The notes below the pieces were generated by a model. It was given only the letters and a program-made list of their open reading frames with translations, was not told the DNA's origin and searched no databases. A stretch of DNA of 63,881 nucleotides, filler included, from Octopus bimaculoides (Eukaryota): the NCBI RefSeq assembly GCF_001194135.2. It is 9 parts of 8 records of this genome, joined end to end, with 100 filler letters (N's around TTAATTAATTAA, not from the genome) between each part and the next. Parts side by side here need not be neighbours in the genome. Positions count along the whole stretch, not along the records: positions 12,965 to 20,914 come from NC_069007.1; 8 more parts are not named here. The stretch is one strand, 5' to 3'. Within the stretch, counting starts at the first letter, position 1; each line of letters starts with the position of its first letter. The position numbers and the translations under genes are program-made. Shown here piece after piece: positions 16,397-18,297 of the stretch.

Positions 16397-18297
16397 GAAA
16401 TTCCAATGAGAAAGGCATTATGGAATTTCGACTTAGTTCTGGAAGATTTTCGAACGAAATATTAATCAGCGCCGTCCTGAAAGTGTATATAAAGACTAAA
16501 GGAAAAAGGCGGAAACGTCGGATCATTTTGCATGTATGTGAGAAAAACCAAGATGGCACCTTCTTCGAATTTGCGACAGTACGATTAAGAATAAAACAAA
16601 AAGGTTGGCAAGAAATTAATTTGCCGTTTTACTTGTTGAAAAAACTGAAACACGAACCAATTAAGTTACATGTGGAATGTGAAAAGTGCAATAGAAAAGT
16701 ACGTTTGATTTTGCCGAAACGCAGAAAATCGAATAAACCAAAGAAAATGCGTGCATTGATTCCTAATGGTAAACGTTCTCCCATGATAGTGATCAATACA
16801 CGCGAAAATCTGAAGCATCCCTTCCGCAAAAGGAACCGACGGGACATCACATTGCCAGCTGAACTTAATGATACGTTTGATGAAGAAGAAGATATTGTTG
16901 ATGGTTATGATAATGTATATAGGGTAAAATCAATTGAAGAGAAAAGCAAAGCCAACGGTAGTCGGAGTTATACAGTGCGAATGGAAAACAGAGAAGAGGA
17001 AGGAGAAGACGAAGAAGATAATGACAATGATAATGATAGTGGTGGTGATGATGAAGAAAGAGCATCAGGAAAAATGAACGATATGGATGTACAAGATGGT
17101 GGCGGCGACGGTGGCAACACAGACATCAATAGCGGCGGCGTCGGTGGTGGTTTCGGAGGAAATGGTAGACAACGAAACCTTAACCAATGGGAACACGACT
17201 ACGCTGACAGTGGTGGTGGTGGTGGTGGTGGTGGTGGCGGTGGTGAAAAAAACCTCGAAGTTATAAGTGAAGATAGTCGCCACTCGTCACCGTCCGAATC
17301 ATCGGAGGGAGCGACCTATAATGGCGATAGTGATGAACGCCAGTGCTGTTTGACTTCACGTTTCATCTCCTTTCGAAGCATAGGCTTACAACATCTGGTC
17401 GTGGAGCCGGACGCCGGTTTCGTAAGCAGCCATTGCTCCGAAGTCTGCCCTGGATCTTCTGCGCCCGTTAACGGCAGAAAAGGAAAACCTATCTCACGAA
17501 CTACCGTGCAGAACAGAATGCAAACCACTAATGAAAACAGAAGTAATAGCAGTAGTAGTAGTAGCCGCAGTAGTGGTAATAGTAAAATAAATAATAGAGA
17601 TGGTAGCAATGCTATTGATTGTAATAGCAGTAGCAGTACTAATAATAACAATCATAGTAATAATAATATTAGAAATGATAATAATAATTGCAGTAGCAGT
17701 AATAATAATAATAATAATAATAAGCATGCAGAAAGCAAGAGTCAGCATCAACAGCATCAGCACAGTCATCATTATCCACAGCACCACCACCACCACCACC
17801 ATCCCCACCACAACCACAACAACCTCCACCACCATCGGCACCCCCACCCCCAACAGCAACAACAACAACAGCATTACCAACACAGCAATCACAACCACAA
17901 CCACAAACACAACGTCAACACCACCACCACCAACAACAACAACAAACACCACCACCTTCCTCCTTCTTCTTCTTCTTCTCCGCTGCTCCCACTCCCTTCA
18001 AATCCACATCATGGCCATATTCATTTTAAACCGCAACAACAAGTACGAAGGGCAACTAACTCTAACCCTGCGCATACTCCGTGTGCGAAAGGCAGGAACT
18101 GTGAAAGACACACCACATCGCAAACACAGCCGAAAGCGGACAAAGCGGCGACGGCGAGACCAAGGCACATCAAACGCCCTTTAAGATGTCGCCCAACTGC
18201 TTTCAAAAACCTTACAATTGCTTTCCTAACAGAAGATCTCGAAATTGAAAATATGACAATTCCAAATGTTATTGTGACGAAATGCGGTTGCAGATGA
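16397..18297 (+). CDS. Terminal coding exon of a TGF-beta superfamily ligand (activin/inhibin-beta-like): C-terminal prodomain, furin site and an internally expanded cystine-knot domain; 5' exon(s) not found in window
   Basis: A T-rich acceptor (ttttttttttttgcAG, AG at 16395-16396, phase 1) opens a stop-free frame to TGA at 18295-18297. Prodomain-like motifs: LISAVLKVYI, KGWQEINL, LHVECEKC, PMIVIN. Furin site RKRNRR at 16825-16842. Knot N-half: CCLTSRFISFRSIGLQHLVVEPDAGFVSSHCSEVCP (17344-17451). C-half: CRPTAFKNLTIAFLTEDLEIENMTIPNVIVTKCGCR* (18187-18297). The subfamily call is an inference from the CC doublet and the CxxC prodomain motif. Confidence 0.9.
16825..16842 (+). other. Furin/proprotein convertase site (RKRNRR) separating prodomain and mature region
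   Basis: cgc aaa agg aac cga cgg, directly after a PMIVIN-type prodomain end, which is the usual position in TGF-beta precursors. Confidence 0.8.

What the first reader, a model, noticed from the sequence alone, without database searches (positions are those of the whole stretch)
17344..18297. Activin-like TGF-beta ligand whose cystine knot is split by a 246-aa low-complexity segment
Seen in sequence: the knot N-half (CC...CSEVC, ending at 17448) and C-half (CRP...CGC, starting at 18187) are separated by 738 nt (246 aa) of Asn/Ser/His/Gln/Pro-rich sequence in the same open frame. Established knowledge: this interval (wrist/heel helix) is about 30-35 aa in typical TGF-beta ligands and contributes to the dimer interface and type I receptor binding. 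Evidence that it is coding: the frame stays open for 1.9 kb although (AAT)n gives TAA stops in another frame, and the repeats are all trinucleotide whereas flanking DNA is dominated by dinucleotide repeats. Inference: a giant (~484 aa mature) ligand with a disordered loop at the type I receptor surface could act as an antagonist or decoy, a matrix-tethered ligand or a phase-separating morphogen. Automated pipelines could easily mislabel it as a generic low-complexity protein.
Basis: partly seen in the sequence, partly recalled or inferred. Interest (0 to 1): 0.9.

Follow-up and report, generated by a model that had tools for sequence, protein, structure and literature searches.

The report
Octopus TGF-beta ligand with giant knot loop
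This is the last exon of a real, conserved octopus gene for a very divergent TGF-beta-type signalling protein whose cystine knot is interrupted by a 246-residue disordered loop that evolves as protein-coding sequence; the gene belongs to a little-noticed mollusc-wide family in which this loop varies from 11 to 318 residues.

Summary
The knot N-half (CC...CSEVC, 17344-17448) and C-half (CRP...CGC, 18187-18294) lie in one open frame, separated by 738 nt (246 aa) that are 69% Asn/Ser/His/Gln/Pro/Thr.

The insert is coding, not an intron:
- The syntenic Octopus vulgaris locus keeps the frame open with a longer loop (318 aa), so the net length difference is in frame.
- Substitutions pile up at third codon positions (16/15/34). 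dN/dS is 0.22 in the reading frame against 1.6 and 1.0 in the shifted frames.
- No usable splice sites lie inside it.
- A more distant cephalopod genomic ORF has a 169-aa loop, not low-complexity, at the same place.

With the loop trimmed, the domain matches Pfam TGF_beta end to end (E 2.7e-11) and models as the two-finger fold.

Relatives form a molluscan family in chiton, gastropods and cephalopods; two members are named 'inhibin beta A chain-like'. All lack the interchain cysteine, and loop length runs from 11 to 318 aa. So the long loop is an extreme of a family trait.

'Activin-like' is only weakly supported. The antagonist, tether and condensate ideas are untested, and I found no transcript evidence. 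The O. vulgaris annotation skips the knot entirely. Verdict: a new variant of a known kind, of moderate interest.

The parts
16395..16396 (+). Splice acceptor AG after an 18/20 pyrimidine tract; phase-1 intron ends here
   Evidence: Sequence; pyrimidine score. The same exon start is seen in O. vulgaris (exon 2 of P0002 starts at the homologous place) and in the distant cephalopod locus L002.
16397..18297 (+). Last coding exon of the ligand gene, stop codon 18295-18297 included
   Evidence: ORF. 90% nucleotide identity and an open frame in O. vulgaris. Whole-exon dN/dS is 0.19.
16397..16842 (+). C-terminal part of the prodomain, ending in the furin-type site RKRNRR (16825-16842)
   Evidence: dN/dS 0.08. 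It aligns with the prodomains of molluscan relatives, with invariant W, LP and C..C columns and a basic site at the same column. Pfam TGFb_propeptide was not detected on this piece.
16843..17343 (+). 167-aa acidic, Gly-rich N-terminal extension of the mature protein
   Evidence: D+E 45 against K+R 14, G 32. dN/dS 0.25 with a significant synonymous excess. Net acidic in all three cephalopod sequences.
17344..17448 (+). Cystine-knot N-half (finger 1): CC ... CSEVC
   Evidence: Pfam TGF_beta profile positions 1-41. AlphaFold pLDDT 69-89 with beta strands. dN/dS 0.19.
17449..18186 (+). 246-aa disordered Asn/His/Ser/Gln-rich, net basic loop inside the knot, with 4 cysteines (codons at 17620, 17689, 18082, 18100)
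   Evidence: Open frame. dN/dS is 0.22 in frame against 1.6 and 1.0 out of frame; differences by codon position are 16/15/34. Synonymous excess P=1.4e-7. No donor matches 7 or more of 9 consensus positions and there is no good acceptor. pLDDT is below 50 for most of it and no helix is predicted. All four cysteines are conserved in O. vulgaris.
18187..18294 (+). Cystine-knot C-half (finger 2): CRP ... CGCR
   Evidence: The Pfam TGF_beta match to profile positions 46-104 ends here; it starts about 20 residues upstream, inside the loop's end. pLDDT 86-94. dN/dS 0.06. A single Cys precedes x-P, so there is no interchain cysteine.

Best explanation
Bases 16397-18297 are the last exon of a functional octopus gene for a highly divergent TGF-beta-superfamily ligand. 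It belongs to a mollusc-wide family on the activin/TGF-beta side of the superfamily.

Shown:
- The exon encodes the end of a prodomain, a furin-type site (RKRNRR) and a 484-aa mature part.
- The mature part consists of a 167-aa acidic Gly-rich tail, finger 1 of the knot, a 246-aa disordered basic/His/Asn-rich loop, and finger 2.
- The loop is translated sequence under purifying selection. It sits where ordinary ligands have 22-37 residues, the interval that holds the wrist (heel) helix.
- In this family the interval is hypervariable (11-318 aa), and the cysteine that makes the interchain disulfide is always absent.
- In cephalopods and gastropods the two finger-1 tryptophans are also gone.
- Between the two Octopus species the loop differs in the length of its homopolymer runs; a run of Asn codons accounts for most of the 72-residue difference.

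Inferred:
- The protein is secreted and cleaved at the furin-type site.
- Without a wrist helix, the dimer cysteine or the finger-1 tryptophans, it probably cannot build the canonical covalent dimer or its type I receptor site.
- It would then act as a monomeric or otherwise non-canonical ligand. Binding through the fingers without assembling a signalling receptor complex (a modulator or antagonist) is the most plausible mode.
- The oppositely charged disordered tail and loop may add matrix or self-association properties.
For: Anatomy and domain:
- Coordinates and residues.
- Pfam TGF_beta scores 29 bits on the intact protein. With the loop cut to about 48 aa it scores 44.6 bits, E 2.7e-11, over profile positions 1-104.
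- Best solved-structure sequence matches are inhibin beta B (5.4e-8), inhibin beta A (2e-6) and BMP7 (7e-6).
- AlphaFold fingers reach pLDDT 83-94 with the loop trimmed. Foldseek then returns only TGF-beta ligands, target TM 0.54-0.78. With the full loop, most of the loop is below pLDDT 50 and no helix is predicted.

The loop is coding:
- The O. vulgaris syntenic locus has an open 696-aa ORF with a 318-aa loop, so the net length difference is in frame, and all four loop cysteines are kept.
- Loop dN/dS is 0.22 (0.13 in the low-complexity core) and dS of about 0.25 equals the rest of the exon.
- The signal is frame-specific and third-position biased. Binomial P is 1.4e-7.
- No plausible splice sites lie inside it.

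Family:
- A second cephalopod genomic ORF (P0003 / L002) has the same exon start, a 169-aa loop that is not low-complexity, and the same acidic-tail and basic-loop charge pattern.
- Gastropod and chiton relatives include Aplysia LOC101862711, Bradybaena, Pomacea and Babylonia. The Gigantopelta and Liolophura proteins carry the name 'inhibin beta A chain-like'.
- Loop-length and cysteine table.
- In a gastropod genomic contig the 84-aa loop is likewise uninterrupted ORF.

Gene completeness:
- O. vulgaris has a candidate exon 1 with a GTAAGT donor 71 kb upstream. It encodes a hydrophobic segment, and its last ~20 residues fall inside a BLASTP alignment (E 1e-7) to the prodomain of a gastropod relative.
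Against: - No transcript or protein evidence could be obtained. No octopus RNA-derived protein fragments appeared in the searches.
- The only annotated orthologue uses a GT-AG intron that removes the whole knot.
- The prodomain Pfam model does not hit the window exon.
- Exon 1 is outside the window. In O. vulgaris its hydrophobic segment lies about 78 residues from the first Met, which is unusual for a signal peptide.
- The distant cephalopod and one gastropod member end in CGY instead of CGC, so the knot itself may be eroding in parts of the family.
- dN/dS in repeat-rich sequence depends on the alignment, which was made at protein level.
- Every statement about receptors, dimerisation and antagonism is inference from missing features.
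Confidence: 0.72

Rival explanations
1. The 738-nt segment is an unrecognised intron, or is mostly removed by splicing, so the real protein has an ordinary 30-aa interval.
For: Low-complexity repeats keep several frames nearly open by themselves: frame +1 has 2 stops and one reverse frame has 3. Trinucleotide arrays also occur in the non-coding 3' flank. No transcript data were available.
Against: Substitutions are third-position biased, and dN/dS is 0.22 only in the reading frame. No donor matches 7 or more of 9 consensus positions anywhere in 17341-18190. The only pyrimidine-rich acceptors are at 17856 (inside a C-rich coding run) and at 18232 (inside finger 2). The frame is kept in O. vulgaris and in a distant cephalopod despite loop lengths of 318 and 169 aa. 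Gastropod relatives carry 83-104-aa loops inside annotated or continuous ORFs.
Confidence: 0.06
2. The locus is a decaying or silent relic: a divergent TGF-beta gene no longer expressed, its knot filling up with microsatellites.
For: No annotated protein with the knot exists for any octopus in the collections searched. The tryptophans, the dimer cysteine and the wrist helix are lost. Relatives with CGY endings have lost a knot cysteine.
Against: Purifying selection acts along the whole exon between two Octopus species separated by dS of about 0.25: prodomain 0.08, finger 2 0.06, loop 0.22. There are no stops or frameshifts in about 1.9-2.1 kb in two octopus species and about 1.7 kb in the distant cephalopod. 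The splice acceptor is conserved. All knot cysteines are retained in both Octopus species.
Confidence: 0.08
3. The O. vulgaris annotated isoform is the true product: the transcript leaves the exon after the acidic run and joins a downstream exon, so the knot and loop are intronic or UTR sequence.
For: Model P0002 uses canonical GT (G|GTGAGG) and AG boundaries and spans a 71-kb first intron, which suggests some transcript support.
Against: The donor is not conserved in the window species, where GGTGAG is replaced by GGTGGT. The homologue of the downstream 'exon' (window about 18985-19130) has a 1-nt indel relative to O. vulgaris, so it is not conserved as coding. The skipped region shows codon-level constraint. 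The acceptor has a poor pyrimidine tract.
Confidence: 0.08
4. The loop is translated but later cut out by proprotein convertases, like a connecting peptide, leaving a two-chain knot held together by its disulfides.
For: A basic cluster lies just before the C-half cysteine in most family members: window RPLR|C, gastropod RLKR and RKRRR, chiton RRQR.
Against: The motif is not a conserved furin consensus. O. vulgaris has KRPIK and L002 has PPRRL. No matching site exists at the loop's N-terminal end. The low-complexity core is under purifying selection (dN/dS 0.13), which argues that it matters beyond being a spacer.
Confidence: 0.1

Closest known systems
Molluscan proteins: 'inhibin beta A chain-like' (Gigantopelta aegis XP_041367330.1; Liolophura sinensis XP_064614437.1), 'uncharacterized protein' (Aplysia californica LOC101862711; Babylonia areolata LOC143279468) and hypothetical proteins of Bradybaena and Pomacea
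   Same: They share the prodomain motifs and a basic cleavage site at the same column. All have CC, CxxxC, a single Cys before x-P (absent in P0021 and P0025) and a C-terminal C-x-C. The loop is variable and basic in all of them. The gastropod members have also lost the two finger-1 tryptophans.
   Different: Their loops are 11-104 aa against 169-318 aa in cephalopods. They have no long acidic Gly-rich N-terminal extension. The homopolymer (N, H, Q, S) content is specific to Octopus.
Activin / inhibin beta chains
   Same: They are the best sequence matches among solved structures, both for the trimmed domain and for the chiton relative. Activin A and B are among the top structural matches. The CC doublet before finger 1, and in the chiton and Gigantopelta relatives an extra upstream Cys, fit the nine-cysteine branch (PMC4564238).
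   Different: There is no interchain cysteine, no GW..W tryptophans and no predicted wrist helix. The loop is 246 aa instead of about 30, and the N-terminal extension is 167 aa. The scores exceed those for BMPs only modestly, and no phylogeny was made.
Lefty, GDF9/BMP15 and GDF3: ligands lacking the dimer cysteine
   Same: These ligands lack the sixth cysteine, the one used for dimer formation (PMC4564238, S5 Fig legend). The chiton and Gigantopelta relatives show exactly this eight-cysteine pattern. From my own knowledge, Lefty is also described as lacking the long helix and as acting as an antagonist.
   Different: No orthology was shown, and none of these proteins came back as a named hit. 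The Octopus protein has 11 cysteines in the mature part (7 core plus 4 in the loop) and has lost the upstream N-terminal one.
Engineered TGF-beta 'mini-monomers' without the heel helix (PDB 5tx4, 5tx6)
   Same: They consist of two fingers and a knot, without the heel helix or the interchain disulfide. They appeared as weak sequence hits. Such monomers are described as antagonistic (title and abstract of bioRxiv 10.64898/2026.03.23.713733).
   Different: They are man-made, with the helix replaced by a short loop rather than a 246-aa disordered segment. Nothing is known about receptor binding for the octopus protein.

Membership tests
TGF-beta superfamily ligand (Pfam PF00019) | Profile match above the curated cut-off | tested here: met
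   29 bits against a cut-off of 27 on the intact protein. 44.6 bits, E 2.7e-11, over profile 1-104 with the loop trimmed. The O. vulgaris ORF scores 26.8 bits.
TGF-beta superfamily ligand (Pfam PF00019) | Six knot cysteines in the order C ... CxxxC ... C ... CxC at the C-terminus | tested here: met
   C316 or C317, C346, C350, C597, C629 and C631, with the protein ending CGCR-stop. All are conserved in O. vulgaris.
TGF-beta superfamily ligand (Pfam PF00019) | Two-finger cystine-knot fold | tested here: met
   The AlphaFold model of the trimmed domain has fingers at pLDDT 83-94. The Foldseek top 50 are all TGF-beta ligands, target TM 0.54-0.78, E down to 9e-6. This is a prediction, not a solved structure.
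TGF-beta superfamily ligand (Pfam PF00019) | Prodomain followed by a basic convertase site | tested here: inconclusive
   RKRNRR sits at the column of the basic site in all relatives. Pfam TGFb_propeptide does not hit the window exon and is below cut-off in the Gigantopelta relative (21.8 against 25.8 bits).
TGF-beta superfamily ligand (Pfam PF00019) | Signal peptide / secretion | not testable with these tools
   Exon 1 is outside the window. The O. vulgaris candidate exon 1 has a hydrophobic 15-mer about 78 residues from the first Met.
Activin / inhibin beta subfamily | Nine-cysteine pattern including the interchain cysteine (CC before x-P) | tested here: not met
   A single Cys is preceded by R (window) or K (O. 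vulgaris). Every family member lacks the second Cys.
Activin / inhibin beta subfamily | Conserved finger-1 tryptophans (G-W-x-x-W) | tested here: not met
   The window has IGLQHLVV. Chiton, Gigantopelta and P0004 keep GW..W, while gastropod and cephalopod members do not.
Activin / inhibin beta subfamily | Wrist (heel) helix of ordinary length between CxxxC and the next Cys | tested here: not met
   The interval is 246 aa. No helix is predicted in either model. The Gigantopelta relative has only 11 residues there.
Activin / inhibin beta subfamily | Closest sequence relatives are inhibin beta chains | tested here: inconclusive
   Inhibin beta B and beta A rank first among solved structures, but BMP7 and BMP2 follow within 2-3 orders of magnitude. 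No phylogeny was made.
Lefty-type ligands (dimer cysteine absent) | Eight-cysteine pattern lacking the sixth cysteine | tested here: inconclusive
   The pattern is met in the chiton and Gigantopelta relatives (definition from PMC4564238). The window protein has lost the N-terminal Cys and gained four in the loop. Orthology to Lefty was not tested.

The most novel reading that the evidence does not exclude
Molluscs possess their own family of helix-less TGF-beta ligands without a dimer cysteine, acting as monomeric modulators or antagonists of activin/Nodal-type signalling. This would be a protostome counterpart of Lefty. In cephalopods the vacant wrist position has been turned into a large basic disordered module, paired with an acidic disordered N-terminal tail. 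The conserved opposite charges of the two would then control matrix retention, range or self-association of the ligand.
Probability: 0.15. Interest if true: 0.75.

Novelty: new variant of a known kind. Interest (0 to 1): 0.5.

Why it matters
The wrist helix and the interchain disulfide are treated as core to how TGF-beta ligands dimerise and recruit type I receptors. A family conserved across molluscs does without both, tolerates anything from 11 to 318 residues at that position, and still keeps the disordered insert under purifying selection. It is a natural experiment on which parts of the fold are dispensable, and on how disordered modules can be grafted onto a morphogen.

The locus is also a practical warning for annotation. 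The only public octopus model of this gene omits the signalling domain altogether, so surveys of cephalopod signalling repertoires built on existing gene sets will miss it.

Tried and rejected
- Searching with the full exon protein was swamped by low-complexity words and returned only the window's own protein. Queries with the low-complexity parts removed worked.
- An exact look-up of the window protein on public contigs found nothing.
- I hoped the Logan contigs carrying the gastropod relative P0013 were transcripts. Contig L003 shows an intron-like pyrimidine tract and AG directly before the exon, so it is genomic and gives no expression evidence.
- tblastn with the N-terminal prodomains of the chiton and gastropod relatives found no exon 1 in the window piece, in 71 kb of O. 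vulgaris upstream sequence or in L002. The candidate exon 1 came instead from the O. vulgaris model and its extended ORF.
- Pfam aligns profile positions 46-66 to the loop's last residues, which could be a remnant of the wrist helix. I do not rely on this: no helix is predicted there, and gastropod relatives have helix-like amphipathic stretches right after CxxxC instead.
- Rfam found no RNA family in the piece.
- Literature searches for a described cephalopod or molluscan ligand of this kind found nothing specific.
- I could not identify the species of the window or of L002 (ENA ERZ21867824).
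Full report
**1. What is in the sequence**

The piece holds one long ORF on the + strand, 16294-18297. Its real start as an exon is the AG at 16395-16396, which follows an 18/20 pyrimidine tract. Upstream of that lie A/T-rich sequence and a 10-N assembly gap.

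Translating from 16399 gives 632 residues:
- The end of a prodomain.
- A basic site RKRNRR (16825-16842).
- A 167-aa acidic, glycine-rich stretch (16843-17343).
- CC...CSEVC (17344-17448).
- 246 residues rich in Asn, His, Ser, Gln, Pro and Thr (17449-18186).
- CRP...CGCR followed by the stop (18187-18297).

The mature part after the basic site is 484 aa.

**2. Is it a TGF-beta knot?**

- Pfam TGF_beta matches the intact protein just above its cut-off (29 bits, two stretches).
- The N-half alone matches profile positions 1-41 and the C-half matches 46-104.
- With the loop cut down to about 48 residues, the match covers the whole profile at 44.6 bits, E 2.7e-11.
- Among solved structures the best sequence matches are inhibin beta B, inhibin beta A and BMP7.
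- An AlphaFold model of the full mature C-terminal region gives confident fingers and a loop mostly below pLDDT 50, with no helix.
- The trimmed model has fingers at pLDDT 83-94. Foldseek then returns only TGF-beta ligands, with target TM 0.54-0.78 and activin A first.

So the fold assignment is sound, and the loop emerges at the wrist position.

**3. Is the loop coding?**

Openness alone proves little here. The loop DNA has only 2 stops in frame +1 and 3 in one reverse frame, and trinucleotide arrays continue past the stop codon. Comparison between species is the stronger test.

The only protein relative found in 5.8 billion sequences with a low-complexity-free query was a 293-aa 'hypothetical predicted protein' of Octopus vulgaris (P0002). 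Its locus (OX597840.1, L001) is syntenic with the window. It contains an open 696-aa ORF equivalent to the window's exon.

- The two ORFs align throughout. The largest length difference is a long expansion of the Asn run that makes the O. vulgaris loop 318 aa, and the frame stays open in both, so the net difference is in frame. All four loop cysteines are conserved.
- dS is about 0.25 along the whole exon.
- dN/dS by segment:

| Segment | dN/dS |
|---|---|
| Prodomain | 0.08 |
| Acidic tail | 0.25 |
| Finger 1 | 0.19 |
| Loop, whole | 0.22 |
| Loop, low-complexity core | 0.13 |
| Finger 2 | 0.06 |

- Shifting the frame by one or two bases turns the loop's ratio into 1.6 and 1.0. The 65 differences fall 16, 15 and 34 on codon positions 1, 2 and 3.
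- The synonymous excess has a binomial P of 1.4e-7.
- No donor-like site matching 7 or more of 9 consensus positions exists between 17341 and 18190. No acceptor comparable to the real one at 16396 exists either.

I conclude that the loop is translated sequence under purifying selection. The caveat is that the alignment was protein-guided and the region is repetitive.

**4. Relatives and the family trait**

An exhaustive HMMER search with the trimmed knot and a profile search recovered a coherent family.

- **A second cephalopod.** P0003 is a continuous genomic ORF from an unnamed ENA assembly (L002 5722-7710). It has the same phase-1 exon start and a 169-aa loop that is not low-complexity. It ends CGYV-stop.
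- **Heterobranch gastropods.** These include Aplysia LOC101862711, two Bradybaena proteins and several contig-derived proteins.
- **Caenogastropods.** Pomacea and Babylonia.
- **A vent snail and a chiton.** NCBI names their proteins 'inhibin beta A chain-like'.

The members share prodomain motifs, the basic cleavage site and the knot. The interval between CxxxC and the Cys before x-P has these lengths:

| Source | Interval (aa) |
|---|---|
| Gigantopelta | 11 |
| Babylonia | 26 |
| Liolophura (chiton) | 29 |
| Pomacea | 38 |
| P0004 | 61 |
| Heterobranch gastropods | 83-104 |
| L002 (cephalopod) | 169 |
| Window | 246 |
| O. vulgaris | 318 |
| Ordinary ligands from the same searches | 22-37 |

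No member has the second cysteine of the usual CC pair, the one that makes the interchain disulfide. Gastropod and cephalopod members have also lost both finger-1 tryptophans. The chiton and Gigantopelta proteins show the eight-cysteine pattern that PMC4564238 (S5 Fig legend) assigns to Lefty, GDF3 and GDF9/BMP15.

The octopus loop is therefore the extreme end of a family-wide hypervariable, helix-poor wrist region, not an isolated accident. I found no paper describing this family.

**5. A conserved property of the disordered parts**

The three cephalopod sequences differ strongly in loop sequence. Even so, in all three the N-terminal extension is net acidic (K+R minus D+E of -31, -28 and -21). 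The loop is net basic (+21, +19, +18), with 38 additional histidines in the two Octopus species. Together with the low dN/dS, this suggests the disordered segments are kept for bulk properties such as charge and length, rather than for a specific fold.

**6. Gene context and annotation**

The O. vulgaris model joins a first exon 71 kb upstream to the homologue of the window's exon through a GTAAGT donor. The ORF of that first exon extends upstream to a Met. It contains a Ser/Asn-rich run and a hydrophobic 15-mer, and its last ~20 residues fall inside a BLASTP alignment (E 1e-7) to the prodomain of the Gigantopelta relative.

The model then leaves the exon after the acidic run and joins a downstream segment, removing the entire knot. 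Two things argue against this as a conserved coding isoform: that donor is not conserved in the window species, and the downstream segment has a 1-nt indel between the species. I think the model is a mis-annotation or a minor isoform.

**7. How it probably works**

Shown:
- A conserved two-exon gene.
- A prodomain remnant and a basic cleavage site.
- An intact knot in Octopus.
- A translated disordered loop.
- No dimer cysteine, no finger-1 tryptophans and no predicted wrist helix.

Inferred from established knowledge of the superfamily:
- The wrist helix of one monomer, together with the fingers of the other, forms the type I receptor site, and the interchain disulfide stabilises the dimer.
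- A ligand lacking all of these is unlikely to assemble a canonical signalling complex.
- It would more plausibly act as a monomeric or non-covalently associated modulator, as Lefty and engineered helix-less TGF-beta monomers do (for the latter).

The odd number of cysteines in the mature part (11) leaves room for an unconventional intermolecular disulfide. The basic loop could bind acidic matrix components or the protein's own acidic tail. None of this was tested.

**8. Rivals**

- **Intron.** Contradicted by the codon-position pattern, the lack of splice sites and frame conservation in three cephalopods.
- **Silent relic.** Contradicted by purifying selection and the intact frames, but not excluded for expression.
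- **Knot-skipping isoform.** Contradicted by non-conservation of its donor and of its last exon.
- **Excision of the loop by convertases.** There is a basic cluster before finger 2 in most members, but the motif is not conserved and no site exists at the other end.

**9. Verdict**

The object is a new variant of a known kind: a cephalopod member of an undescribed molluscan ligand family related to the activin/TGF-beta branch, with an exceptionally expanded, translated, disordered wrist loop. Interest is moderate (0.5). It would rise if expression and a monomeric or antagonist role were shown.

Noticed in passing
window 16843-17343 and 17449-18186; L001 and L002 homologues: Opposite net charges are conserved in three cephalopods. 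The mature N-terminal extension is acidic (-31, -28, -21). The knot loop is basic (+21, +19, +18, plus 38 His in each Octopus species). This holds despite little sequence conservation with the distant species.
   Followed up: partly
L001 9479-10100 (O. vulgaris, 71 kb upstream of the exon): This is a candidate first exon with a GTAAGT donor. Its ORF extends upstream of the annotated start to another Met and encodes a Ser/Asn-rich run. A hydrophobic 15-mer follows about 78 residues in, which looks more like a signal anchor than a classical signal peptide.
   Followed up: partly
window 18985-19130: This is the homologue of the third 'exon' of the O. vulgaris gene model P0002. It differs from O. 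vulgaris by a 1-nt indel and several substitutions, so it is not conserved as coding sequence.
   Followed up: yes
L002 7690-7710; P0013/P0019 C-termini: The distant cephalopod ORF and one gastropod relative end in CGY instead of CGC. The last knot cysteine is replaced, while its usual partner in CxxxC is kept.
   Followed up: no
window 13328-13433, 13656-13824, 14198-14377: These are interspersed repeats in the intron. Each matches several to some thirty places in the 94-kb O. vulgaris locus at 68-88% identity, presumably octopus SINE-like elements.
   Followed up: no
window 18322-18657: Trinucleotide and hexanucleotide arrays, (TAA)n, (GAT)n and (ATGACG)n, lie directly after the stop codon in non-coding DNA. 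Period-3 repeats are therefore not a coding signature at this locus.
   Followed up: yes
window 20465-20901: A 33-bp A/T-rich tandem array of 13.5 copies lies at the end of the piece. (GA)n at 14575-14692 and (AC)n at 19625-19695 are also present.
   Followed up: no
window 16344-16353: A 10-N assembly gap lies in the intron 43 bases upstream of the splice acceptor. It is the source of the XXXX in the mechanical ORF 16294-18297.
   Followed up: yes
L003 135-150 (gastropod genomic contig): An intron-exon boundary (pyrimidine tract plus AG) lies directly before the residues that align with the start of the octopus exon. The intron position in the prodomain is therefore roughly conserved between gastropods and cephalopods, differing by about four codons.
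   Followed up: partly
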